NCBI GenBank assembly: GCA_004431415.1
Contig: QPMI01000047.1
Span: 181,367-245,366 of the forward strand
Reading direction: 5' to 3'
From: Cyanophora paradoxa CCMP329
Lineage: Eukaryota; Plantae; Glaucophyta
DNA: 64,000 nucleotides
Part shown: piece after piece, positions 17,803-36,749 of the stretch
How positions within the stretch are numbered: the first letter of the stretch is position 1
Layout: every line of letters begins with the position of its first letter
Position numbers and translations under genes: made by a program
Notes under the pieces: model-generated
Told to the model about the DNA's origin: nothing
What the model saw: only the letters and a program-made list of their open reading frames with translations
The model's database searches: none

Positions 17803-20800
17803 ATGGGTCTTCCCAAAGCTCTGAAGGAGCATGTGAGGCGGCGCATGTCTTCCGAGACCCTTGATGTAGTCATCGAGACGTCCGAAAGCCCGCAGGCCCC
17901 AGCGGCACCCGGCAGCGACAGCGGCATTCATCAAGGTTCGGTCCAGAGTCCAGAAGCTGCCCAGATTGCTATAAGACGCTTGTCACACGTGCGCCGGCGC
18001 CGACATTTGCTCCCGCGCGCAGGCCCTGCGCATGCGACATCAACATCGCAAATCCAGGAGGTTCTGCCGCGGCGCACGGTTAAGACGGTTCAATTCGACA
18101 TCGCAACCCCCCCTTCTCCGGCTCCCGCTGCATCATCGTCTCGGCTTCCAGTCAATTCGATCAATGACAATGTTGACGTCGACGTCGGCCGCGGTCCGTA
18201 CGCATCCGCGTCAAGCATATATAGGCCGGACGTATATGCTTCAAGCACTGACCGCTGAATTCCTCCGCGCGCAGGTGTTTCGACTCCGTCTTCAAGCATG
18301 GCGGTGGGCGGCGCGACACGCGTAGCCAGCGCGCCGCCGGCGCCCTTAGAATCTACTCGTGTGGCCAGCGTCGGCGCGGCAGCGGCGGCGCCTGCACACG
18401 CGTACGCAGCCAACGTCGGCGCGGCAGCTGCCTCGCCCACTAGTACTCGTGCGGCCAATTTCAGCGCGGCAGCGGCGGCTCCAAGGCCTCCTGCACATGT
18501 AGCCAGTGTCGGCGCGGCGGCTGCCTCATCTTCTCGTGCAGCCTTGGCCAGCGTCGGCGCGGCGCGGGCGGCGTCTGCGTACGCAGCCAGCGTCGGCGCG
18601 GCAGCGGCAGCGACCACTCGTGCGACCAGTGTCGGCGCGGCGGCGGCGGCTCCTGCACACGCAGCCAGCGTCGGCGCGGCAGCTGCTTCGTCTTCTCGTG
18701 CAGCCATGTCCAGCGTCGGCGCCCTCGGCACGGCGGCGGCGGCTCCTGCGCGCGCAGCCAGCGTCGGCGCGGCAGCTGCCTCGTCTTCTCGTGCAGCCTT
18801 GGCCAGCGTCGGCGCGGCGCGGGCGGCGTCTGCGTACGCAGCCAGCGTCGGCGCGGCAACGGCAGCGACCACTCGTGCGACCAGTGTCGGCACGGCGGCG
18901 GCGGCTCCTACACATGCAGCCAGCGTCGGCGCGGCAGCTGCTTCGTCTTCTCGTGCAGCCATGTCCAGCGTCGGCACGGCGGCGGCGGCTCCTGCGCGCA
19001 CAGCCAGCGTCGGGGCGGCAGCCGCCTCGTCTTCTCGTGCAGCCTTGGCCAGCGACGGCGCGGCGGCGGCGGCGTCTGCACATGCAGCCAGCGTCGGCGC
19101 GGCAGCGGCAGCGACCACTCGTGCGACCAGTGTCGGCACGGCGGCGGCGGCTCCTACACACGCAGCCAGCGTCGGCGCGGCAGCTGCCTCGTCTTCTCGT
19201 GCAGCCATGTCCAGCGTCGGCACGGCGGCGGCGGCTCCTGCGTGCGCAGCCAGCGTCGGCGCGGCAGCTGCCTCGTCTTCTCGTGCAGCCTTGGCCAGCG
19301 TCGGCACGGCGGCGGCAGCGGCTCCTGCGCGCGCAGCCAGCGTCGGCGCGGCAGCTGCCTCGTCTTCTCGTGCAGCCTCGGCCAGCGTCGGCGCGGCGGC
19401 GGCGGCGGCTCCTGCACACGCAGCCAGCGTCGGCGCGGCAGCTGCCTTGTCTTCTCGTGCAGCCTCGGCCAGCGTCGGCGCGGCGGCGGCGGCGGCTCCT
19501 GCACACGCAGCCAGCGTCGGCGCGGCAGCTGCCTTGTCTTCTCGTGCAGCCTCGGCCAGCGTCGGCGCGGCGGCGGCGGCGGCTCCTGCACACGCAGCCA
19601 GCGTCGGCGCGGCAGCTGCCTTGTCTTCTCGTGCAGCCTCGGCCAGCGTCGGCGCGGCGGCGGCGGCGGCTCCTGCACACGCAGCCAGCGTCGGCACGGC
19701 AGCTGCCTTGTCTTCTCACGATCGTGCGGCCACGTCCAGCATCGGCGCTGTAGCGGCTGCGCCTGCATCTACACCTGCAGCCAGCGTCGGGGTAACAGCC
19801 GCCTCGCGATTGTCTTCTCCTGCAGCTGCGGCAAATGTCGGCACGGCGGTGGCGGTACCTGCAGCTGCTCGCGATCGTGCGGCCAGCGCCGTTGTTGCGG
19901 CGGCTTCGCCACCTCGTACAGGCAGCGTCGCTGCTGCTGCCTTGACGTCCGCTCGCAATCGAGGCATTTCGCAGCCGGTGACCCCGGCTGCCGCCGCTCC
20001 TGAAGCTTACGACATTTTCATCTCGCACAAACAGTCCACAGGAAAGAACCTCGCCCGCATTTTCAAGCAGGCCGTGCGTATATGCATGCGCTACAGCGTA
20101 GATTCCGCGCATGCACAGCCTCTCACTCAGCTGTTGTCCACAGGCAGAGAAAGAGGCGCTTGAGCTGGGCATCGAGCTTAGCATCTTCCTCGATGTTGAC
20201 GACTTGAACGACATCCATATTCTAGGCAACAACGTTCGCGCCTCGCGCAGCGTTCTTCTCCTTCTGACAAAAGGTTCTTGCAAGTGATTTTACATGGGTG
20301 ATTGTTCGCTCCATTCTGATCGAAACTACTTTCCCTGATCCCATGCAGATGTGTTCCGCAGCCACTACGTGCTTCAGGAGCTGCGAGCGGCAGACGAAGC
20401 GGGCGTGAAAATTGTACTGGTCTTGTACCGCGACCCCATCGACGGCTTCTTGGATTTCCCTGCCGGTTCGCAATTTTGCTATCAGCTCTCCTTCAAGTAC
20501 ATGAACAACATAAAATTTTTCGACGCATGTAGAATATATATTATGGTCGTCCGTCGCTGTGTCTTTTGCTCTTACACGTCGCGCGATACCCTGCAGCGGC
20601 GACGGTGGGGCTGCCCACAGCTGCGGAACTTAAAGCGGTGGGGCTTGACGAGGCTTCTGCGCGGGCTCTGCTCGGCCGCATCCTCAGCATCACGGCCATC
20701 GAATATCAAGGCGGCGGCGAGTACCACCGCACTTGCATCGAGCAAGTACTCAAGCGCTGTGGCGTCGATGGACGATTGCGCATCTCCAAGAAGGTGGTAG

Positions 20801-23800
20801 CGGTAAGTTCAGGATTCTTGCGCTCGTCCCTGTTGTGGCCGCAATAATTAATCGGCGCGCGCCCTTCCTTCTCTTCAGTACGCGAAAGCGAGCCTGGAGA
20901 AGCCGGCGCTGACGACGGACCTGGAGCTCTACGTGCCGCCGAGGGCCTCGACGCGAACGGACCCCGCCCGCTCGGTCCTGGTGGACCTCTTCGACGAAGT
21001 CAAGCGCTTCCTCTGCCGCTTCGTGCCGGCGCCACGGGCGTCGGCGGCGGCACAGACTGCACGGGCACAAGCGGCGCAGGATCCAGAGTCGGAGTCGCAA
21101 GTGCTGCTTCTCGTCGGGGATCCCGGCTCCAGCAAATCGACCTTCCTCTCCTTCCTCCATCGCGAGGCCTGCCGCCAGCACGAGACGGATCGCGCCGCGG
21201 CACCTGCAGCGGCGAACGCGTTGCCGCTGACGTGCCTCGTGCGGCTAACGAACCTGGGCAAGGAGGGAGCGCGCGGCCGCTTGCGCCAGTACGTTGCGGA
21301 GGAGCTCGGAGTGCAGCCAAACGACCTTCCGTCAATCCGAGCACAGTAAGTCCTCGCTGATTTTCGCTGTGGGCTCAACTGACGCCGGTGCAACGCAGGC
21401 AGGGCCTCGTCCTGCTTCTCGACGCGTACGACGAGCTGGACGAGAAGATCAACTTGTGGCGTGCCAACGAGGTCGGCGCGTGGGCATCCGCGGCCGTCAT
21501 TACGTGCCGCTCGGCATACACCGCCCGCCTTCCGAGCTACAACGTGCGTATGCACGGCTGCCATCTGAAAGCGCTGCATCGCGTGTTCTGCATGTCTTCA
21601 GCATGAACATTCTAGCTCTGACGCCTTGCTTACGCATATGTATACATTTTATACCTTTTTGCAGGAACTCTTTGCACCTCCCGCGCCACACGCTGACCAG
21701 CCCGCGGTTCTTGCTGAGCTCTGCACGTACAAATTTTCCACGGAGCAAGTGCGCTATTGCTGCTGCCGCTGCCGCTGCCGTCGCCGCTGTCGCTGCTGCT
21801 GATCATGAGCGCCTGATCATTGACAGATCCTTGAGTACTTGAAGCAATTCGTGCGGCTTCACGGGAGCAGTGGGGGGCGGGGCGTCACCTCGTGGAGCCC
21901 GGAAGACTACGAACGTCATATTGAACGTACCCCAGGCGCTGCAAAGCTGGTCACGAATCCTTTTACATTGAGGTGCGTGTGTGAATCTCCTTCCAAATCC
22001 GGCTTCAATTCGAGCCTACTTTTTAGCTGATGATCTCTTGCGAACGCAGTATGGTTGCCCGCGTGCTTCCGGAAATTGTGGGCGATCTTGAGCGGTGCGC
22101 CTGTTATCCTAGAGCAAAATTAAACATTACGTCGATCTATCGAGAATTTAGCGAAATATATCGAGAAATCCGACTGCAAGCGAAATGAAATTTAATGCGC
22201 GCTTTAAATTTTGCAGCAAAAAGCAAGAGGCTCGCAGTGGAAAGGGGTACGTAAACAAAGGGCCCACAAGCGAGCTGGTATCGTTTCTCGATCTGTATTC
22301 ATACTTCGTCCGCGTGCGTTGTGTTTTAACGTTCTTCTTCTATCGCTTTACCAAGACATCTCTGTGTGCAGGGTTGGTTCAACAGGCAGTGGAGCAAAAT
22401 AATCGATTATCGAGCAATCCGCCCCTTGCCAAAAGTTGCAGGTGCTTGGATTTCATATTCAAGCTTTTTTGGTTTCTGAGATGTGGTGCGCAGCTCAATG
22501 GAATCCAGAGCGATTCCGCACCTACTGCGAGGGCTTCTGCCGGAGTCTTGCCAAAAACATGCACAAGGTAGCTATAGTTTGGAAACCGCTAAATACTGCA
22601 ATACTGATGCACGCGCAGGCGTCCATCTCCGAAATCACTTGCCGCCTGCTCGGAACGGATGCAGAGGCTGGCATCTTTGAATTCAGCTCACAGCGGCAGT
22701 TGCAGGCAGCCCAAGTGCCAGGTCCTGCGGGCACCGATTCGCCCTACGAGCGCTGCGTGAAATTGCTGACAAGCGAGGACGAGCTGATGACTTTGACGCG
22801 CGATTCGTGCCCGCTACGCACAACCCCCGGGGGTGTTGGGGGAGAGTCGGTCCACGTTCGATTTTTGCACAAAGTGGGCATATGCATGGCCTCCGCCCTT
22901 GCAAACATGTACACTCGTAGCTAATTATAATCGGCGCATGTATTAGACTCTCTTGGAGTACTTCATTGCAGACAGCGCTTTTGAAGACGCGAATCCAAGA
23001 AACATTAATGTTCGTATCTTTGATCCTCTCTGTGCGCTTCTGTCCAGACAATCGCCTATTTTGGATCGCTTTATCTTCTGTAGGCTTAAGCTTCGGAATT
23101 CATGCATATGGGTACTTTTATAACATTTGATGTTCGACACCTCTGCAGATTTCCACGGCACAGACACAGTCACTCGCTCGGAATCGTGACAAGCAAAGCA
23201 CTCTGCACGTGAGGTGCCAGCGCCCATGACCATAGTTTCCAGCATGAAGTATACGTAGCAACTACTTTGCCTATCGCAGGTCCATTGTAGGAGAGCTGAG
23301 CCTGCTCCGATTCTTCTCCGATCGTTGTCGCAAGGACGACACCTACCGAGACGTGAGACACATGAATTTTCTGCGCTCGCTCTTCCTGCTTTCGATTTAT
23401 TGACGTGAGCGCAGCACCTCTTGTGGCTGCTTGCGCGGAGCCGGCGCCGCGACGCGACCTCCGAGGACGTCACTGCTGCCTCGAACGCGATCACCATCCT
23501 CAATCACGGTGAGCCGCCGTGCTAGAAGCTAGCTGCATAATTGGCTAGGATGTGAAGCGCCTGACTTATTAACGTTGCTGGCAGCCGGTGTCTCCTTCGC
23601 CAAAAGCTACCTGCGCGGCATCCGGGTGCCCGGGGCCGATCTGCAACGTCTGGAGGCGGCTGGGGCAGATTTTCGCGGAGCAGACCTTACGGGCTGCTTG
23701 CTTGACGGCGCGAATTTCGCGAACGCAATTTTTTCTGGAGCGAGACTCGATAAATGCCATACAAGTGTTTTTCCTCCACTTCGCGGCCACAGGTCGACCG

Positions 23801-26800
23801 TGAATGCCGTGGCCATTTCAGCGGTGCGTAAACAGGAATGTATGTACAATTAGAGGCAACACGATCAAATCATAGGCACCGCAGACAATGGCGGGTACTT
23901 GCATAAATACTCGATTGGGGCATACTAGCTAGTAAATATCGATTCGCGATCAACATTCTAAGTTTGTGATGGCAGGACGGGAGGCGGGCTATTTCAGGCG
24001 GCTGCGACAAAACAGTGCGAGTTTGGGACCTGGAGACAGGCTCGCAGTTGCAGCGGCTGCAATGCCACACAGGGGAGGTCACGTCGGTCGCACTGTCAGC
24101 GGTGCGCAATATCCGTCAGCGCATTTGAGAAAGAGATACCCGGAGCGCCCGTGGGACTGCTAGAGCTTTGCTTATATTTGTTATAAGAGAGCCAGGAAAG
24201 AAAGCACTGCACAGCACATAGTTATGAAAAAGCGGATGAAAAATCTATTGCAGGATGGACGCCGAGCCATTTCAGGAAGCAGGGATACCAATGTATGTGT
24301 GTGGGACCTGGAGACGGGGGCGGAGCTGCGGCGACTGGAAGGCCACACTCATGAGGTCACATCCGTGGCGATGTCTGCGGTGCGTTGGCGCCTCGGCAGA
24401 TGTTCACAGGCGCGAGAGCTCGGACGGGCCGCGGTGATTAATGTTACGCTTATTATTATTATTATTATTATCAGTAGAGATGGATCAATCGATGAAGATA
24501 AACGGTTGGTTATCCTGACTGCAGCTGGCGCTGCGGCCACGGGCCGCAGGATGGACGGCAAGCGGTCTCAAGCGGCAAAGACAAGATAATACGTGTGTGG
24601 GACTTGGAGACGGGGGTGCAGCTGCGACAGTTGGAGGGTCATACGCATGAAATTACCTCGGTGGCGCTGTCTGCGGTGCGCGCGAATCATGGCGATCATT
24701 TACAGTGGCGAGCTGACGTTGTGTATATTGAGTGGGCTAGACTTCGAAGAGCTGGGTGTCGCTATTAAGCACTAGAAGGGATATCCTTCATATTTCTGTA
24801 TACGTTTTTATAATTTTTTGAAACACTATCTTTGATCAGCTGCCCCAGCTGAACTGTGCTCGCTCGCGTGACATGCTAAACGAATCGAACGGCTTTATGA
24901 CGCGCGAGGCCCGCGGCCGGGGGCGGCAGGACGGGCGACGGGTAGTCTCGGGCAGCAAGGACAGCACGGTGCGTGTGTGGGATTTGGAGACAGCCGTACC
25001 ACTGCAGCTGCTGGGATACCACGAGGGCGGGGTAACTTCTGTGGCGCTGTCAGCGGTGCGTGGTATAGCAACGGGGGGGAGATAGAGAGGGGGATAGGGG
25101 GAGGGGGGAAGGGGGCTCGAGGATTTCAAGTGGTCAGACAGTCCAGTATCAATCTGACAGCGCGAGCAGGTTTAAGTTATAATTAGCTTGAACTACGCTC
25201 TAATGTTTATCTAATGTTCTCTGGAGCTAAACCGTTTAATTTACGTATGTTGCATTTAGCTATAGAGGCTACATTAGATATTGCGTCAAGTACGGAACGG
25301 ACGGCTCCTCTGATGCGACAGGGGCGGGGGCGGCAGGATGGACGGCAAGTGATCTCAAGCGGCAAAGACAAGACAATAGGTGTGTGGAACCTGGAGACGG
25401 GGGCGCAGCTGCGGCGTTTGGAGGTCGATAAGCAGGAATACATCTCTGTGGCACTGTCTGCGGTGCGTTTTCTGCAGCGGGAGAGTCGGGCCCCCCTCAT
25501 CTGCGCTGATTTGGGGAATATTTCCTAATGAGCGGATGGAAATGTTTATGTTTTTTTATTGTATATAACAGCCGGGTCTTCTTGATCATGAACGGTTAAC
25601 GTTGTGAAGTTCCGTTTGACATGGACGGGTCCCGTGCGGCAGGACGGGCGACGGGCTGTCTCAGGCAGTGAAGACGCGACAATGCGCGTGTGGGATTTGG
25701 AAACGGGAATGGAGCGTGTGCGTTTCGAGGGCCGCACGGGACGAGTTACTTCTGTGGCACTGTCGCCGGTGCGCAATCGCGTTCTGGCGTCGGCCATTGT
25801 ATTTCATCCAAATTTCGTATTTTAGACGTCTAGATCAGCAATCGCGAGCTTCTGAAAGAATATTAATGCGCATGCTTGTTCAATGCATTGATAACTTTCA
25901 AGTCGTACTCCTATAAATTGCCCCTCTGATGTCTAGGGCCTCGGACCTGCAGGACGGAAGGCGAGCGGTCTCTGGGAGCATAGATGGAACAGTGCGTGTG
26001 TGGAATTTGGAGATGACGGAGGCTGGGGTTCGGCGTCTGGAAGGCCACTCGGGTTCTGTGACTTACGTGGCAGTGTCGGCGGTGCGTGCAAATGTATGGG
26101 AACTTTCGAAATTCACTCCATGGGCGTCAATTGACTCCATGAGGGATTCACACGCGCACTCTTGAGACGGGCCAAAACCTAATGGAATACCCCGCGGCCG
26201 ATTGTCAAAGCGCTCTTTAATTTGATTTGATTGTTTTGTTCGAATTCGCAGGACGGACGAAGAGTGATTTCGGGCAGCATCGACAGCACGGTCAGTTTGT
26301 GGGACCTGGAGACGGGGGCGGAGCTCCGACGTTTCGAAGGTCACACAGACGACGTCACATCCGTGGCTTTTTCAGCGGTGCGTGATTCTAGATCTGGGAG
26401 AAAATATAGATGAGTGCCTTTTCGGCGGTATATATATATATATATGTCGGTGCGGGTGTAATGCAGGGAAATTGCATGCGCAGATCTAGAGTCATGCATA
26501 TGATCAGATCTAGATTGAAAATGCAGGGAAATTGCAGATCTAGATGCATCGAGATCTATAGCTAAGAGTTTCAATTGCAGGGATCGGGCTTGTGCTGCGA
26601 AATCAGATCTAGCCTTATATTAGTCTTGCACTCGTGGACATGGCTGCGAGAGATTGCATTGGAAGGACGTACTTTCATTTATACGTATATCCTGACTGCT
26701 CCGGCCGCGGGGTTGGCAGGATGGACGGTGGGCTGTTTCTGGTAGTAAGGACAGTACAGTGCGTGTGTGGGACCTGGAGACGGGGGCGGAGCGCTTGCGG

Positions 26801-29104
26801 CTGGAATGTGACTCGGGGCGGGTCAACTCCGTTGCACTGTCGGCGGTGCGTTGTGTAACCCCTACATCGGCAGTGGTCATGCTTTAGCTTAAGCTTGCGC
26901 ATAGTTTGTCTTTCATCAGCTGCCCGCCCCAGTTTTTTGACGCGCGCGGCGCGGCGCCGGCGCCGGGTCGGGGCGGCAGGACGGGCGATGGGTAGTCTCG
27001 GGCGGCGAGGAAGGCGCAGTCAGCGTTTGGGACACGGAGTCGGGGACGGAGCTGCAACGACTGGAAGGCCACAGGTCCGATGTCACGTCTGTGGCGCTGT
27101 CGGCAGTGCGTGCACAGAAGCCTTGAAGGGGGCAGCGGGGAGGGGGAGGCGATCGATCATGATATATTCGTCAAATCTTCGACTCGCTAACTAAATCCGG
27201 GGGCGCAGGATGGACGGCAGGTGGTCTCGGGCGGCGAAGACGAAACGGCGCGTGTGTGGGACCTGGATACGGGGACGGAACTGCGACAGCTGAAGGGACA
27301 CTATTTTGGAATCACCTCCGTGGCGCTGTCGGCGGTGCGCTGATAGTTTTGGCATCGCGGCAGGGATTGGACAGAATTCGAAGGGCTCGGGTACAGTTTT
27401 AATATTAATGTTTAAGGCTTCGTCGCCTATTATTCCGCGCTTCATGTCAGAATCATGGAACGAGATGACGGGATAGGGAATTAATTAGGGATTAGGGAAT
27501 TTTTGTATGCGCGGAGTTCTCATGTAGTGACGGATGCATATGCCCAGGATGGACGGCGGGCGGTATCAGTCGGCTCTGACGAGACGATTCGGGTTTGGAA
27601 CCTCGATACAGGAGAGCAGTGTTGGCAAGGGAAGCTCGAAGTCCTGGTGCAAGCCGGAGGCGTCTCGGCAGGGGGGCTTCAGGCGGATCCAGAGGAGGCA
27701 TCCGGATCTAGATCTGACGAGGAAAGAAGCGAAAGTAGCGCTTCGACATTATTTTCCGAGTTCGATGCGCCCATCTTTTCATTGGGGCTCTCAGCGGTAC
27801 GCGAAGTTTGCTGACCGTGAATCCTCCTCGCAAACCCATCGATATCCATCTTACGAATTTCGGGCGGCAGGATGGGCGGCGGGCCATCACAGGCGGAGAG
27901 GACAAGATTGCGCGTGTGTGGGACCTGGGTCCAGATTCGGGCGCGGAGCGGCTGCGACTGAAAGGACACACGCGAGATATCACCTCGGTGATGCTTTCCG
28001 CGGTGCGTGCTCCTGATATTTTAGCAGGCAGTGAGGAAAGCAGTGATCGGCAGCAATAAATAAATTTAAATTTTGGTGAGGGGCAGAATGAGATCATAGA
28101 ATGAAAACAACTAAGACGTAGCCTAGTAGGTTTGTGAGTGGGGGGGATTGAAGCAGCGCTAGCAGTGACTTTTCGGAAGGGGCAGGGTGAGAACAAGGCG
28201 CCGAGGCGTCTGATTCGGTTGCGGGGCGGGGCGGCAGGACGGACGGCGGCTGGTTTCAGGCAGTAATGACAAGTCCGTGCGGGTGTGGGACCTGGAGATG
28301 TCGTTCGAGCTCTGCGCGAAGAAGGGGCCCGCAGTGCATGCGAGCCCCTCGCCACCGGAGAGGCTTACAGTACCAACAGCGGTGCGCGATCTAGAGCTGT
28401 ACCTCGCTGGGATTTCTCCCTGCAGGAGCTGATTATATTTTTCGCGACAAATCTGCAGGTCGGCGGGTGCGTTCGACGTATTTTTGAGGCCGTCAGCGGC
28501 ACGCCCCCGGAGTTCGCTGAAGCCACGGTGCGCTGTATATAGTTTAGTTTTATGTGTACGCTATATATGCGCACCATGTAAGGATTGCGCCTAAAATCTA
28601 TATATAGCCATATAAATACCGTGTAACACTCAATTAATGCGCCAGAAATTAATGCGTTGTTGTAGGACCCGGACCCCTAGTATTGATAATCATGCGGCAC
28701 CGAATTAATGCGTTTTGAACCTTTTTGGTTGCAGTAGGGGGGTACATACAGCAGTTTCTTAGCGTTTCGGTATTAATGCGGTCCCAAATTAATGCGTTTT
28801 GCCACCGAAAAACGCATTAATTTGGTACCGCATTACTTAAGTGCGCGCATTACTTAAGTGTTACATAGAACGCCTAACTTCAATCAGTCCAACTGCTCTA
28901 GATCTGTACAGCTAGTTCCGGGATCCGCCTGAAACAGTGTTCCCCCCGCAGTTCGACGAGGCGACTTCGATGGCGCCGTCGCTGCGGGCTGTGCTCGAGG
29001 ACCGCGGGGCCCGGCTCGTCCCCGGATCCGGAGGGGGCGCGGGGGACCCGGGGGCCCTCGAGCTCGACGAGGACGCCCCCGTCGTGCCCTACCGCTGGGG
29101 GTAG
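17803..29104 (+). CDS. NLR-like STAND protein: Ala/Ser repeats - TIR - NACHT - pentapeptide repeats - 14 WD40
   Basis: [33 protein letters not shown] (from 20008); Walker [16 protein letters not shown] (21116-21142); Walker [11 protein letters not shown]; VITCRS; LVTNPFTL; FLHK|TLLEYF; [11 protein letters not shown]|AGVSF; pentapeptide [34 protein letters not shown]; 14 WD40 exons 23976-28381; last exon 28952-29104 [22 protein letters not shown]. The start codon is inferred. Confidence 0.9.
18360..19900 (+). repeat. Coding minisatellite (ASVGAAAA.. units) in the NLR N-terminus
   Basis: Core gccagcgtcggcgcggc recurs about every 42-45 bp; near-identical 87-bp units ([29 protein letters not shown]) start at 19381, 19468, 19555 and 19642. 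Confidence 0.95.
23976..28381 (+). repeat. Array of 14 phase-0 exons, one WD40 repeat each
   Basis: Exons 23976-24101, 24254-24379, 24550-24675, 24930-25055, 25337-25462, 25643-25768, 25953-26081, 26252-26377, 26720-26845, 26980-27105, 27209-27334, 27548-27796, 27871-28002, 28238-28381. All begin cag|GA(C/T)GG (DGR) and end at a gt(g/a)cg donor; ten are exactly 126 nt. Confidence 0.95.
28622..28865. mobile_element. MITE-like element in the last intron of the NLR gene
   Basis: Imperfect 21-bp terminal inverted repeats tgtaacactcaattaatgcgc / gcgcattacttaagtgttaca (19/21); internal ttaatgcg/cgcatta subrepeats; no clean target-site duplication. Confidence 0.65.
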
Positions 29105-29287
29105 GCTCCAGCTGCAGGCTGCCAGGCCTAGCGATATAGGCTGCTCGAATATTAGTTCAACGTTTTGATTTTTAGAGAGGCATGGTATCGCTCTCAGTTT
29201 ATGTTTGTCGATAAGATTGTTGTCTGCGAGCGCGGATTTCACGACTTCTACCGGAATACATCAATGACGGTCCCGCATTGGATCGGA

Positions 29288-30750: not shown

Positions 30751-31029
30751 ATCGCAAATAATTGCATTGCAATCAGGCTTGATCGTGAATTGCGAATTGT
30801 AATCAATAGCAAATCATCCACGATTCATCTGTGATCATGAATCGCATATTCAATGATTATAATTATATTAATTCGGAAACTTCGGCTAATTATTATAGCT
30901 TGCGCGGCGCGGCGGCGCCGCACTGTGCATGCGCAGTGTGCAGCAGTGCGGCCGCAGCGGCCGCAAGAAGATCTCATATTCTTTGAGAGACTACGGAGCT
31001 TAGTAACGGAAAGGCGAACCCCCCGTATA

Positions 31030-31420
31030 CTGTAAAGCAGGAAATATTTAAGAGGTTGGATATTAATAGTACTAAAGTTCTAAGGCCTGAGTACTAGAGT
31101 TTTTGGTACTATTAAACCTGAGGTCCGTGGGAGGGGGCCCCCGGGTATAGTACGTAGCGCAGTAACGTCGGCGCGGCCGCCGGGCCGTAGGTAGGTGAAT
31201 TGCTCCGAATTTGCTCGAAGGGAGCGCAGAAGCACGCGGCGTCGCGATCGCCGGCGTCGAGCAACCCCCCTTGCACGCGCCGCGCCCACGCGCACCCCGG
31301 AACCCCCTGCAGCTGCTGAAGGCTTCCGCGACCAACTCTTAATTATTTTAGGCCTACTAAACCGACCAAACCACGGAATTACTAAACATTTTGGGGTCTT
31401 AAATATTTCCTGCTTTACAG
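31030..31420. mobile_element. Tc1/mariner-type MITE (391 bp)
   Basis: Perfect 24-bp terminal inverted repeats CTGTAAAGCAGGAAATATTTAAGA ... TCTTAAATATTTCCTGCTTTACAG flanked by TA on both sides (31028-29, 31421-22); no transposase. Confidence 0.85.
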
Positions 31421-31898
31421 TACGTATACGTAGAAGAAGCTCGATCTCATAGCACTGGGGGTACGCAAGAAGATCTCGCAATTGCAACGCTATAGCTATA
31501 GCTACGCGGGGGGTACGCAAGAAGATCCGGCATACATACACCGGCATACGATATCGATATACCGAAAAATGGAAAAACCGAAAAACCGACACGACGTCAC
31601 GGCGTGTCCATGTGCGCATGCACTGTGCACATATGCATATGTACATTGATATCGATCCGCGCCGATGAATTCGAACCGTTGAATGCACACTGCACACCGC
31701 CGTGATCGCTCATGATCATGATCATGATCAGTGCCAGATGCATATATACAAGTACATTAATATTGTTACAGTAGTACTGCAGATCTAGAACTAGAATTCG
31801 AAATTAAATATTTAGCGTGCTGCATATTCATATATATATATATATACTGGAGAGCTAGAAATATTTAGTATGCTGCATATTTATAGTACATTTTTGGG

Positions 31899-32352
31899 CG
31901 ATCTACTAAATATTTCGAATTCCCGCCTGCTGAAGCCGAGAATTCTTAGGGGTAGTCCCGTCTCCGCCATACAACTTGGCAAAAGCCCTGCGAAGACCGA
32001 TCTACTAAAATTTTACCAGCCGCTAAAGTGGCAGTTTTGGCGAAGTACTAATTATTTTCCTGTACTAAATTAACTAGTTCTACAGTAGTTCTAAAAGGTT
32101 TTGGTCGATCTACTAAATATTTCTCAGAGTCTCGCCTGCTAAAGCCGAGAAATTCTAGGGGTAGCCCCGTCTCCGCCTACAAAAGCGGCGAAACTTGAAA
32201 AGCCCTGCGAAGATATAGTAGTACTCTGATATACTAGTACTCGTACGGTAGACCGACCTACTAAATATTTATAATTACCAGCTGCTAGTGGCGCCCGGCA
32301 CTGCGGCAGTTTTGGCGAAGAACTCATTATCTCAAAAGTTTCCCGTACTAAA
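31899..32352 (+). repeat. Degenerate tandem duplication (two copies of about 170 and 245 bp)
   Basis: gatctactaaatattt..cgcctgct..aagccgaga..ggggtag..cccgtctccgcc..aaagccctgcgaaga..ggcagttttggcgaag occurs at about 31900 and about 32107. Confidence 0.85.
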
Positions 32353-32729
32353 AGAGAACCGGGCTCCGAGGCTCCGTGCATGACGCCCCGTCACTAAATT
32401 AGTGACGTCAGTGATGTCACGACTTGGCGACCCACGAATCCAGGGCCACGATTCATGTGATCGATCATGTGATGGGCTCTGCCCGGCTGACAGGTCCCGC
32501 TGACTCCTCCGACTCTCTGTCGACTCAGTGTCGAGCTCGAGTCTCTGATCATGAGTCATGACCGTCGGATCCGGACGTCACGGTTATGACATGCATATGC
32601 CATGATGTACCGTACGTACGGCCTCTGACTCTAGGCTCTTACTCTATAGCTAGGAGTACTACGGTAGCCTCTTAGGCGAGTAAGCGCAAGCCAGCCTCAG
32701 GCTACTGCAGCTGGCTTAATTATAATTAT

Positions 32730-32970
32730 GAATTGCCGTGGTGTAAAACTGCCGAATTCCTAAAGTTCGCCCAAAACCGGAGTTGCGCATGCCGTGGCCG
32801 AATCATATAGCTTCTGCTTCTGCTCTATCATATGCATGATGGTGGGCTAAGAAAGAACCGGTACCTATATATCCCCCAAGCAATTGCCGTGATGCTAATT
32901 TATAATTATACATTGCCGAGTTCGGCCTTTCGGCAATTTACGGCAATTTAAAACTTCGGCAAAAAAGGCC
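32730..32970. repeat. Cluster of ttgccg / cggcaa inverted motifs, possible decayed foldback element
   Basis: aattgccgtg, ctgccgaa, caattgccgtg, ttgccgag on the left; tcggcaattt, acggcaattt, tcggcaaa on the right. Confidence 0.35.
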
Positions 32971-34034
32971 GTCCTACAGTACTGCAGCTGCCAGGCAGTG
33001 CCACTGGCCAGCCTATAGCTTGTGCCAGGCTGGCCCAGCATCTGGCCACTGTGGCCAGCATCTCAGAGCCTACGGTCTGCCGCAGTGCTGCAGTCTGCGC
33101 AGCTGGAACTACCGGGTAGATCTTGATTCTGAGCATGAGCTCGAGCCTTTCAAGTAAGTTTGACTCTTTGAAGTTTCGAATTTCGATCGCGAATCCATCG
33201 ATTCACGAAACGATCCGATGAGCATACTAGTAATCGAGAATCGAGATCCGAGACTCGCGAATCGGCGCCGGCGCCGGCCTGATCATGAGTCCTGAGTCCT
33301 CAGACGTCGCGTTGCGTCGATATCGATGACGTCGAGTCGGAGTCATCCCATACAAAGAAAAGTCGGTCCGGTAGCAGTTTAATTTCATATAATTGTATAA
33401 ATTTTTAAAAAAGTCGGAACGTGAACGGTCCGGAAGTACCGTATACGTAGTACTACGGTACAGATCTAGAGTCGCCGCGGCGCACTGCGGCACGCGTGTA
33501 CATGTACAGTCTGCGGCATATGCATGTCACATGACTCAGTGATGTACAGCTGCAGACCGCGCGCCGGCGCCAGCTTATTATAAAACAATATTGCATGATG
33601 ATGCAGCCCATCGATCGTGATATCGATCGCGATATCCTGATCATGATTTCCGATCATCCGATGATGGGATATCCGATGATCGATTTCGATCCCGATTCTC
33701 GAATCCCGACTCCCGCGCCGACTCGCCGCCGAGTCCCGATTTGCATACGTATACGTATACGTATACCGGTATCCGATCCTTATTCCGGATCCGATCGTCG
33801 GATCTTCCGAAGTTCGGATCGGACCGTCGGACGGAATTCGAATTCAGCGTTGACGTACCAGCAGTAGTACCGTAGTACGCGTTCGCTGCGCGCGCCGCGC
33901 CCGCGGCCGCAGCGCGTTTCAAAGTTTTCACCGAGTCAACATCGATATCGATATCAGTGACATATCGATCACAGCCGCAGTGCATCATCGCACGCGCATA
34001 CGTATACGTGCACATCGTGTCGACGTCGGCGCAA

Positions 34035-36749
34035 ATGATGCGGTTCGGGTCTCGACTCCTCCTTCCCCTGGGTGCGTTTCTAAGATTGCCATGGAAAGGC
34101 CTTGGCGTCTCTCTTACGTAAGAACCCTGCGGTGCCCTGCACAGCCCTCTTGGCAGCAATCGCGAGCGCATCTGCTGCAAGCGTTCTTAGTGAGGAGGCG
34201 TTGAGCGTCAACGTTCATCTCGAAAGAACTATTTCAGCGGGCGATGTCGCCGTGTACAGCTTCTCCGTTCCAAGCAACCTTCGCAAGGTAGTCAACGTGT
34301 ACATACAAAACATCTTTACGGTGCTTCTGCGCATGCGCATGCGTTCATATCTTAATATGGCGCCGCGGCGCGTCCGCGGCCGTCTGAATGCTTCTTGAAT
34401 CTGCAGGCTATCCCAGATGACTTTGAGTATGATGTGAGCACTCTCACGTCCGACGGCATTTCAACTGGACGCCCTCATGGCGGAGTCGGGACGTGCAAAG
34501 GAACCTCCTGCTACGACGGGCCGCGGAAAACAATCAACTTCTGTGACGGTCAGCGTGTTTTCCGAAGCGCTCTAAATCTGATATATATATCGATCGCAAA
34601 CTATCAGACGAATTCCTAATCTAGATCTTTCGACCATCGGGCGCAGGATGGAATGCGCAGCTGGGCGAAGTCAAAGTTCAGTTCCGGATCAAGAACACGA
34701 ATAACTACTTGAACGCCAAATTCAAAGTCTGGGCAGCCTACCAGGCCTGCCGTGCGCACGATCATTTAAGTGGATGCGTTTCATCTTAGACGACAATATT
34801 TAATATGCGTATATATATATGTATCGCTGCATGTACGTATATACGCGCTGACGGTTCGACGATCGCGAACTCGATACAGAGTGCCCCAAGCGGGCTTACC
34901 TGCGGGATAAGCTGCAGATGAGCGCCTGGTGTGCAGGGGGCCTAGCCAATCCAGATTGGTACCCGGACCCGATCACTGGCGTGTCCCTCGAAGATATCTC
35001 TGGTGGTTGCTTAACGGTCGGCGGAAAACAAGTGTGCGAGCCTCAAGGAGGTCTGGTTTGCAGCACAGGCGAGCGCTGCCCTCTGGGTACGAATACGTAT
35101 GCGCCGATCGCGACGTGAAACAACGCTAATTATATATATAATTTTTATGTATATAGTAATCACAATGAAAATCGTCAGATGACCCCAATATGACGCTCGC
35201 TCCTCCTTCAAGTTCAAATCTGGCGCCAACCCCCACACCAAACAAAGGCGCCGGCGCCAGCGCCGGTTCTTGTAAGCAGAGCTGCAGCTGCGATTGCTAT
35301 TAAGTTTGCTGCATACTAACTTGCAATTGGAGCAGACACAGTCCCAAGCGGCGTGAACAGCAACCCGTCGGCGCAAGTATGTGGATCTTTTTCTTTTTCC
35401 TTTTCCCGTACATGTCGGACGATTTTAGGTTGGTTGCTCAACTTCCATTTTTCTCAGAAACCTCTCAATTGGCACCTTTATTATACCAACGCCGCCTGCA
35501 ATGACCTTGAATGGCCTGTAACTTGCAAGACGGGAGCTGGAGACAAGCTGTCCGCCGTATTCACAAAGAGCTGCGTGACGATTAATGGAAAAACAACCTA
35601 CTCCGGCACCTGCACTCGGACCACTGCTACGGGAGGAAAGTTGGAATACGTCTACCACATTCCGGGTGCGGATATTGATGCGCATTATAAAATATCGAGA
35701 TCGATATCGATGCGAAATGTTTTTTAAATATTTTTCTGACACCGAGTGCGGGTAGCCACGATTACGATGACTCTGTCGGGCGTGTACAGCGACTTCGTAG
35801 CGGCGTACGGATCGGAAACGAAGGCCATGGACGTCATTTACGCAGAATTCGCGAAGCAATCCGGCGGGGCGCTGTCTACCTCCCAGACCTGGAACGTGAG
35901 TACTGCACACAAGTTAGAGCTCGAGTGATGTGTGATCTTATGATTATATATTCATTCGATTACTTGAGCTGCGCGCAGATTGTCGCTATCTATGCTGGGA
36001 GCATTGTCATTACAATTGCAGCAGATGCATACGACAGTACCACCGTGACCGCTATTGAGAACACTGCGCGCGCCATCGCCGCCTCTTCCGGATTCCTCGG
36101 GCTGAAAGCAACGCTTTCTTCCGACAACGCCGAGCGTCCCGCTTGGACGATTGCAACAACGGCCAATAAGCCGACAGACCAGGCTCCGAGCTCGAGCAAC
36201 AACCCCAGCTCAAGCGGCAGTTCAAGTAAGCGTCTCCATCGATATCAGTACTAGTAGTACTATATATATAGCTAGTTGCGGTATTGATTGCACTGCTTAT
36301 TAATATTACTTCCCTGCAGACACAGTTGCCCTCGCTGCAGGCATCGGCGGCGGCGTTGGAGGGTGCGCTCTGTTGCTTTGATAAAACAGACTCTGAGAGC
36401 CTTTAGAGATTAGCCGCTGAGCTTCGCGATCGCAAGCTCGCTGACCATGATGCAATATTGCAGGGCGGTGCTCCTCGCTGCCATCGGCACGACGGTGTAC
36501 TGCATGAAGCGCAAGCGGCACAATCGCAACGTGTCCACGGGACGGCAGGCCAGCGCCACTAGTACTGGCCCCGCACTGCACGCCGGCAATGATTTCGCGA
36601 AGCCCGTCTCCGTTCAAAACGTCTCCATTGCCGTCGCCGACGATGCGTACGGCGACGTCCAGAAGCCGGCTCAGCTTGTCTCGAGCTCGCAGCCTGCAGC
36701 CTATGCGCCGTCTGCGCCTCCCGCAGTTAACGTTGCTGCCCATGTTTAA
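34035..36749 (+). CDS. Type-I membrane glycoprotein with Cys-rich ectodomain and SEA-like juxtamembrane module
   Basis: Signal peptide MMRFGSRLLLPL|ALLAAIASASA; Cys-rich exons; ITMTLSG..|IVAIYAGSIVITI (SEA-type GSxV motif); Ser/Pro stalk; TM VALAAGIGGGVGG|AVLLAAIGTTVYC then KRKR; stop at 36749. Confidence 0.7.

What the first reader, a model, noticed from the sequence alone, without database searches (positions are those of the whole stretch)
23976..28381. One-exon-per-blade WD40 sensor: a cassette system for receptor diversification
Seen: 14 consecutive phase-0 exons with identical boundaries (DGR...|gt), ten exactly 126 nt, so any exon can be skipped, duplicated or swapped in frame. The scaffold is conserved while introns are largely dissimilar. 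Variation concentrates at the residue before the conserved Asp (C,R,K,K,K,E,I,I,K,E,E,S,E,N) and after the GH position (TGE,THE,THE,EGG,KQE,TGR,SGS,TDD,SGR,RSD,YFG,TRD). Known: the equivalent surface positions are hypervariable in Podospora HET-E/HNWD receptors, and exon-per-repeat shuffling is described for Ectocarpus LRR-ROCO and NB-ARC-TPR genes. Inference: an algal NLR whose double propeller is diversified by exon shuffling and/or alternative splicing. I know of no description of this for WD40 NLRs in this lineage.
Basis: partly seen in the sequence, partly recalled or inferred. Interest (0 to 1): 0.9.

Follow-up and report, generated by a model that had tools for sequence, protein, structure and literature searches.

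The report
Exon-per-repeat WD40 NLR in Cyanophora
An immune-receptor-like gene of the alga Cyanophora paradoxa has each of its 14 WD40 sensor repeats on its own exon, but the RNA joins them in order, and the family appears to vary by DNA recombination, as fungal self/non-self sensors do, not by mixing exons.

Summary
In detail: 14 phase-0 WD40 exons, ten of 126 nt. They end a 34-exon TIR-NACHT-pentapeptide-WD40 gene of Cyanophora paradoxa that reads open (about 2,100 aa) and is transcribed. It has at least 12 paralogues with WD40 units; the nearest outside relatives are in Mortierellaceae, a Mortierella endosymbiont and Sorangium. The exon is one repeat period cut in the a-b turn, not one blade. 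The cassette reading is mostly unsupported at this locus. RNA contigs (3 samples) join W4-W14 in order; no skip is among 15 listed joints (7 hidden). Repeats are old (67% nt), with no dN/dS>1 class (power 10/10 at omega 3), no orphan exons and no exon taken from a paralogue. The variable positions top the list in 129 unrelated WD40 arrays too. Younger paralogues do turn over repeats, but below exon level, as in HET-E. New: the first three WD introns are selectively retained, the first in all four runs, predicting a sensor-less TIR-NACHT form. This scan noted such arrays at other loci of this genome; I found no paper on them.

The parts
17845..20007 (+). N-terminal low-complexity Ala-rich region with an 87/246-nt tandem repeat; start codon and splicing here uncertain (the annotated model starts at about 17845 and splices out part of the repeat)
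20008..20802 (+). TIR domain over four exons (..20073, 20144-20273, 20349-20465, 20597-20802); putative catalytic Glu at 20378-20380
   Evidence: Pfam TIR_2 E 2.8e-4, below the curated cut-off; motif
20879..23508 (+). NACHT-type NTPase and helical domains, exons 5-17; Walker A at 21116-21139 with Ser for the last Gly; Walker B at 21409-21435
   Evidence: (NACHT E 2.9e-3, below cut-off); 100% match to annotated protein tig00000190_g13867.t1
23585..23823 (+). Exon 18: pentapeptide repeats plus the GH and strand a of the first WD40 repeat; ends at the same SA|DG intron site
   Evidence: Pfam Pentapeptide E 5e-16; joint to W1 in RNA
23976..24101 (+). WD exon W1, 126 nt
24102..24253 (+). Intron W1-W2, retained in contigs of all four RNA runs; in-frame stop 8 codons in, predicting a product without the propeller
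24254..24379 (+). WD exon W2, 126 nt
24380..24549 (+). Intron W2-W3, retained in part of the RNA
   Evidence: contigs 2, 9 and 13
24550..24675 (+). WD exon W3, 126 nt (83% identical to W5)
24676..24929 (+). Intron W3-W4, retained in the main contig of X15 and X16; its 3' part is uncovered in X17 (inferred from bin depth)
24930..27334 (+). WD exons W4-W11 (24930-25055, 25337-25462, 25643-25768, 25953-26081, 26252-26377, 26720-26845, 26980-27105, 27209-27334), spliced in order
27548..27796 (+). WD exon W12, 249 nt, with a long acidic Gly/Ser-rich insert in place of the d-a segment
27871..28002 (+). WD exon W13, 132 nt
28238..28381 (+). WD exon W14, 144 nt; strands b and c of repeat 14, then a divergent tail
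28459..28527 (+). Tail exon 33
28952..29104 (+). Last coding exon with the stop codon; transcript runs on to at least 29190

Best explanation
The array is the sensor end of an intact, transcribed TIR-NACHT-pentapeptide-WD40 STAND (NLR-like) gene, one of an expanded Cyanophora family. An ancestral repeat carried one phase-0 intron in the a-b turn. Unequal crossing-over or conversion then copied and homogenised repeat-plus-intron units inside each gene, which by itself gives equal, in-frame exons. In the family, new sensor surfaces arise in the DNA by HET-E-like repeat turnover, with exchange points inside exons as well as between them. This copy is an older array that has largely stopped homogenising. 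It is spliced in order from W4 on and most likely encodes one fixed 14-repeat sensor. It also makes intron-retaining transcripts that stop after the first repeat. Likely mode of action (inferred from STAND proteins, untested): the propellers hold the NTPase closed until a ligand binds their top face, and oligomerisation then activates the TIR domain. Shown: gene structure, transcription, splice joints, intron retention, family, repeat divergence, absence of omega>1. Inferred: recombination mechanism, exon limits in paralogues, immune role.
For: Open frame over 34 GT-AG exons; exons 2-17 identical to the annotated protein; consecutive RNA joints and no base differences. Repeats group by gene or subfamily, and the ten clean repeats of this gene fall on one side of a branch (1 change, SH-aLRT 85, quick tree). 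Paralogues with cores 80-88% identical have 16, 13 and 14 repeats; two of three pairs show no collinearity (p 0.32, 0.41; third pair p 0.002). In six high-identity paralogues the two variable patches of one exon period are unlinked (r 0.007, p 0.45, 68 units), and identical patches recur with different partners. Fourteen of 15 inserts in paralogue models sit at the same boundary, several with intron-like ends. At this locus four-fold sites are 47% identical (saturation 33%), M1a against M2a gives LRT 0.001, and simulated omega 3 is detected 10 of 10 times. Exon density equals that of the rest of the gene in a genome with 9.2 introns per gene (PMC6704402).
Against: Paralogues are known only as predicted proteins, with no DNA, so their repeat order and exon limits may be partly mispredicted. 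Unlinked patches could also come from fast independent mutation. Logan contigs drop rare forms, 7 weaker joints were not shown, and one graph branch in X17 is unexplained. TIR and NACHT hits are below Pfam cut-offs, and Walker A is atypical. No population or strain data were tested.
Confidence: 0.68

Rival explanations
1. One reading: the exons are interchangeable cassettes, and alternative splicing or whole-exon shuffling builds a combinatorial receptor repertoire, as proposed for Ectocarpus ROCO and NB-ARC-TPR genes.
For: All exons are symmetric and phase 0. Repeat number and order differ among paralogues. In X17 the contig graph branches at the W1 donor without a merge at the W2 acceptor, which may be a W1-to-W3 or W1-to-W4 joint (table 8; my inference). 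Boundary inserts of paralogue P0018 recur as two types in mixed order.
Against: No skip among 15 listed joints; W4-W14 lie on one contig in X15 and X16. No intronic, antisense or orphan exon in 64 kb. The exon is not a blade. Patches within an exon period are unlinked. No omega>1.
Confidence: 0.12
2. Regulated intron retention is the functional point: the first WD introns act as a switch between a full receptor and a sensor-less TIR-NACHT-pentapeptide protein, as with truncated isoforms of plant TIR-NLRs (N, RPS4). This can hold together with the best explanation.
For: Only the first three WD introns carry contig coverage; bins in later introns are at or near zero, so DNA carry-over is excluded. 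The first is retained in 4 of 4 runs (3 samples, 2 studies). Retention gives a stop 8 codons after W1. W3-W4 retention differs between studies. Plant precedent: PMC4100160.
Against: Slow splicing, detained or decay-bound transcripts, or an overlapping antisense RNA would look alike in unstranded contigs. No protein evidence; not tested in paralogues; depth is only 3-12.
Confidence: 0.25
3. A decaying copy: the gene left the recombining pool, its propeller is eroding and splicing of its first WD introns is failing.
For: Loss of the GH in several repeats, long insert in W12, long terminal branches, retained introns, atypical Walker A.
Against: No stop or frameshift in 34 exons; 79% of repeat sites under purifying selection at omega 0.14 (although this partly reflects the past); the Walker A change is shared by all paralogues where the motif was found; transcribed throughout.
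Confidence: 0.12
4. A non-immune scaffold or signalling protein whose WD40 array varies only because top-face residues are unconstrained.
For: Positions 10, 12, 33, 34 and 36 are among the five most variable in 129 non-Cyanophora WD40 arrays at all levels of internal identity; omega is about 1 at the variable sites here.
Against: TIR with a catalytic-position Glu, NACHT-type switch, lineage-specific expansion with varied N-terminal domains (TIR, SAM) and repeat turnover fit conflict-type receptors.
Confidence: 0.1

Closest known systems
Podospora HNWD/NWD NLRs (het-d, het-e, het-r; PMC1805685, PMC13449251)
   Same: NACHT plus C-terminal WD40 array; repeats homogenised within genes; variable repeat number and order; variable sites at HET-E codons 25, 27, 7 and 9 (exon positions 10, 12, 34, 36) in the paralogues.
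   Different: TIR rather than HET effector; pentapeptide linker; an intron in every repeat; this copy has 61% internal aa identity (HET-E type 80-100%), no positive selection, and position 36 nearly fixed; no known ligand.
Ectocarpus LRR-ROCO and NB-ARC-TPR genes (PMC3341825, PMC11378527)
   Same: One repeat per symmetric exon in the sensor domain of an algal candidate immune receptor.
   Different: WD40 rather than LRR or TPR; no intronic, inverted or orphan exons here; no exon skipping seen; no positive selection at this locus; short introns (74-342 nt).
NACHT-pentapeptide-WD40 proteins of Mortierellaceae, their bacterial endosymbiont and Sorangium
   Same: Nearest outside relatives over the NTPase-pentapeptide core (23-29% identity to P0002, E down to 1e-109); same Walker B and domain order.
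   Different: The Cyanophora clade has Ser for the last Walker A Gly, N-terminal TIR or SAM domains and an intron in every repeat; direction of any transfer not tested.
Plant TIR-NLRs with intron-retaining isoforms (tobacco N, RPS4, RCT1; PMC4100160)
   Same: Retention of introns at or near the start of the sensor predicts a TIR-NTPase protein without most of the sensor.
   Different: NB-ARC-LRR rather than NACHT-WD40; function shown there, only transcripts seen here.
Animal NLRs with exon-modular LRRs (NLRP3; PMC6642158, abstract only)
   Same: Strict exon modularity of the sensor repeats of a NACHT protein.
   Different: LRR; exon skipping is documented there and not here.

Membership tests
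NLR-like STAND (NACHT-WD40) | NACHT-type NTPase with Walker A and B | tested here: inconclusive
   Pfam NACHT E 2.9e-3, below cut-off; strong core similarity to proteins carrying PF05729; Walker B intact; Walker A has Ser for the last Gly throughout the Cyanophora clade
NLR-like STAND (NACHT-WD40) | N-terminal effector domain | tested here: met
   TIR_2 E 2.8e-4 with Glu at the catalytic position; paralogues carry PF13676
NLR-like STAND (NACHT-WD40) | C-terminal superstructure-forming repeat | tested here: met
   14 WD40 repeats; paralogue model matches multi-propeller structures including 2ymu and Apaf-1 (pTM 0.49)
NLR-like STAND (NACHT-WD40) | Ligand-triggered oligomerisation and defence output | not testable with these tools
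   No functional data
HNWD-type high-internal-conservation sensor | Repeats 80-100% identical within the gene | tested here: not met
   61% aa and 67% nt here; several paralogues reach 78-85% aa
HNWD-type high-internal-conservation sensor | Four top-face codons under diversifying selection | tested here: not met
   Three of the four sites vary, but at omega about 1; LRT 0.001; power 10/10 at omega 3; paralogues not testable without DNA
HNWD-type high-internal-conservation sensor | Concerted evolution and repeat turnover within the family | tested here: met
   Repeats cluster by gene or subfamily; number and order differ among close paralogues; predicted proteins only
HNWD-type high-internal-conservation sensor | N-terminal HET domain | tested here: not met
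   TIR_2 found, no HET hit
Ectocarpus-type exon-shuffling receptor | One repeat per symmetric exon of equal length | tested here: met
Ectocarpus-type exon-shuffling receptor | Intronic, inverted or inactivated spare exons | tested here: not met
   None on either strand of the 64-kb window, by protein and DNA profiles
Ectocarpus-type exon-shuffling receptor | Alternative splicing of repeat exons | tested here: inconclusive
   No skip among 15 listed joints; 7 hidden; contigs drop rare forms; one unexplained branch
Ectocarpus-type exon-shuffling receptor | Positive selection on repeat exons | tested here: not met
Ectocarpus-type exon-shuffling receptor | Array differences between strains | not tested

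The most novel reading that the evidence does not exclude
Cyanophora has an NLR family that pairs HET-E-like DNA recombination of exon-per-repeat WD40 sensors with a splicing switch at the start of the array. Regulated retention or skipping of the first WD introns and exons would tune the ratio of full receptor to sensor-less TIR-NACHT protein, and in the younger paralogues might also change the propeller make-up.
Probability: 0.2. Interest if true: 0.75.

Novelty: new variant of a known kind. Interest (0 to 1): 0.45.

Why it matters
I found no paper on NACHT-WD40 receptors in glaucophytes; the genome paper does not mention NACHT, WD40 or TIR; and I found none on WD40 NLRs with one exon per repeat. 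The family shows that a single-celled alga from an early branch of Archaeplastida has an expanded NLR-like set with fungal-style repeat turnover. It also lets one ask whether exon-per-repeat structure drives receptor diversity or is only a by-product of copying a repeat in an intron-rich genome; this locus favours by-product. The retained introns give a cheap test of whether plant-style truncated TIR-NLR isoforms arose independently here. Each ingredient is known elsewhere; the combination and the lineage are new.

Tried and rejected
Exon skipping as the main isoform: not seen. Positive selection among the 14 exons: rejected with a power check. Orphan or antisense exons: none. Collinearity with any paralogue: none (lowest p 0.07). 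Mosaic test on this gene's DNA: best pairs p 0.002 of 45, not significant after correction; the 27-30-nt run shared by W2, W8 and W9 is also matched by other transcripts (loose ends), so it is family consensus and no proof of recent conversion. A strict four-gamete pattern of whole patches was not found. DNA for paralogue P0008: not on record. A search with a paralogue's WD array gave only generic WD40 proteins; these were used as the control. Neighbouring ORFs gave no Pfam hit. The careful repeat tree did not finish; the quick tree was used. The joined spliced model was not sent to any search or folding tool: searches used single exons or stored protein ids.
Full report
Observation. All are bounded by AG and GT, all are phase 0, ten are 126 nt and the others 129, 249, 132 and 144 nt. 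Profile searches of both strands of the 64-kb window find these 14 and no further copy. Fourteen DNA runs hold 0.99 of the sampled words of the region, which argues against an assembly artefact, though they may include the source of the assembly.

The gene. From splice-site coordinates I derived 34 exons on the + strand that read open for 2,093 codons from a provisional start at 18298 to a stop at 29104. The order is an Ala-rich repeat region, TIR (Pfam TIR_2, E 2.8e-4, Glu at the catalytic position), a NACHT-type NTPase (E 2.9e-3; both below curated cut-offs), pentapeptide repeats (E 5e-16), 14 WD40 repeats and a short tail. The largest NTPase exon found a 100% match, EukProt Cyanophora paradoxa tig00000190_g13867.t1. 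That model agrees with mine over 769 residues but ends inside the pentapeptide exon and lacks the WD array. The 5' end remains uncertain. It was assembled only inside scripts, from coordinates, to check the frame and to compare it with proteins already fetched. The database search and the fold of the joined protein were left out.

The family. About two dozen C. paradoxa proteins share the core, 12 or more with WD40 units. The next relatives are NACHT-pentapeptide-WD40 proteins of Mortierellaceae, a Mortierella endosymbiont and Sorangium, at 23-29% identity. All Cyanophora members in which the motif was found have Ser in place of the last Walker A Gly; the outside relatives keep Gly. MCM helicases work with Ala or Ser there (own knowledge), so this need not mean inactivity. 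In paralogue models 14 of 15 inserts between repeats fall at the same boundary, some beginning like a donor or ending like an acceptor read-through. This is indirect evidence that the intron site is shared across the family. No paralogue DNA was available.

Exon against blade. A model of paralogue P0008 places the boundary in the turn between strands a and b; positions 10-12 are the b-c loop and 32-34 the d-a loop (mean pLDDT 72, pTM 0.49; best match the repetitive propeller 2ymu). An exon is therefore one repeat period that straddles two blades. Symmetry needs no special explanation: one intron in a 42-residue unit, copied with the unit, gives equal in-frame exons. Mean exon length is 137 nt in the array and 139 nt upstream, and 14 of 15 donors in the array are GTGCG against 6 of 17 upstream, as expected for one ancestral intron. 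The genome averages 9.2 introns per gene (PMC6704402).

Splicing. Contigs of four probable RNA runs (3 samples, 2 studies) were laid on 23200-29190. The listed joints are all GT-AG and all join neighbours: pentapeptide to W1, W4 to W5 and on to W14 and both tail exons. In X15 and X16 one contig spans W4 to the 3' end. No base differences were listed. Seven weaker joints were not shown, and contigs drop rare forms, so only major skip isoforms are excluded. In X17 two contigs break at the W1 donor with no matching break at the W2 acceptor; this may hide a W1-to-W3 or W1-to-W4 joint and is unresolved. Unexpectedly, the first three WD introns are covered. W1-W2 is retained in all four runs, without a break in X15 and X16. 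W2-W3 is retained in part. W3-W4 is retained in X15 and X16 but apparently not in X17. Bins in later introns have zero or near-zero depth, so this is not DNA. Retention of W1-W2 gives a stop 8 codons after W1 and a product with TIR, NTPase and pentapeptide but no propeller. Plant TIR-NLRs need such isoforms in some cases (PMC4100160), but unfinished splicing or an antisense RNA would look the same here.

Variation and selection. The exons are old: 67% identical in nucleotides (60-83%), 61% in amino acids, 47% at four-fold sites against 33% at saturation. HET-E-type arrays are 80-100% identical (PMC13449251). The HET-E selected codons 25, 27, 7 and 9 (PMC1805685) correspond to exon positions 10, 12, 34 and 36. 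All four, with 33, are the most variable sites in the paralogues; here 36 is nearly fixed. A codon model puts 10, 12 and 32-34 in an omega = 1 class together with 6, 23 and 26, and finds no omega>1 class (LRT 0.001). Simulations with five sites at omega 3 were detected 10 times in 10. The same five positions head the variability list in 129 non-Cyanophora WD40 arrays, largely from prokaryotic or metagenome gene calls, at every level of internal identity.

Turnover in the family. Repeats group by gene or subfamily (25 label changes against 63 for shuffles). The ten clean repeats of this gene lie on one side of a branch, so none was recently taken from a sampled paralogue (42 columns, quick tree). 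Its order matches no paralogue. Three paralogues with cores 80-88% identical have 16, 13 and 14 repeats; their repeats intermix on the tree, and two of the three pairs are not collinear. If whole exons were the moving unit, the two variable patches on one exon should travel together. They do not (r 0.007, p 0.45; across the intron r 0.10, p 0.09), and identical patches recur with different partners. This fits crossing-over or conversion inside the conserved middle of the exon, as in HNWD genes. The result rests on predicted proteins.

Verdict. This is a real NLR-like gene with an exon-per-repeat WD40 array, in a family that works like the fungal HNWD sensors. It is not a member of that family (no HET domain, low internal identity, no selection signal), and it meets only the gene-structure criterion of the Ectocarpus system (PMC3341825). 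Literature searches found no description in glaucophytes. Earlier notes of this scan report such arrays at other loci of the same genome; they are leads, not support. New here are the RNA test, the selection test with power, the sub-exon unlinking and the selective intron retention. Novelty: new variant of a known kind; interest 0.45.

Noticed in passing
window 24102-24929: Selective retention of the first three WD introns in RNA contigs; the first gives a stop 8 codons after W1. An in-frame ATG at 24224 inside the first intron could start a WD-only protein.
   Followed up: partly
window 21116-21139: Walker A has Ser for the last Gly in all Cyanophora paralogues where the motif was found, while fungal and bacterial relatives keep Gly; effect on nucleotide binding unknown.
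   Followed up: partly
window 23625-23793: The public gene model splices inside the pentapeptide exon and stops at once, so the annotated protein lacks the whole WD array; RNA contigs cover the full exon and join it to W1, so the model looks wrong or minor.
   Followed up: partly
window 18355-19717: Coding tandem repeat (period 87 and 246 nt, about 14.6 and 5.3 copies) giving an Ala-rich N-terminal region; real splicing here not checked.
   Followed up: no
window 27548-27796: W12 carries an acidic Gly/Ser-rich insert of about 41 residues in the d-a region, present in the spliced RNA; it would sit on the top face of the propeller.
   Followed up: partly
window 24300-24331: A 30-nt core of W2 is shared with other, much deeper RNA contigs, one of which continues into non-WD sequence; probably paralogues.
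   Followed up: no
proteins P0018, P0022, P0024: Inserts at the repeat boundary recur as a few sequence types within and between these paralogue models, suggesting introns or mini-exons copied along with the repeats.
   Followed up: partly
proteins P0006, P0009, P0020, P0021, P0088: Paralogue models with the same NTPase-pentapeptide core but no clean WD40 units and other C-terminal sequence; either sensor swaps or gene-model errors.
   Followed up: no
window 20000-29000 and 31000-36000: The gene and some flanks have about 50% G+C, against about 70% in much of the window.
   Followed up: no
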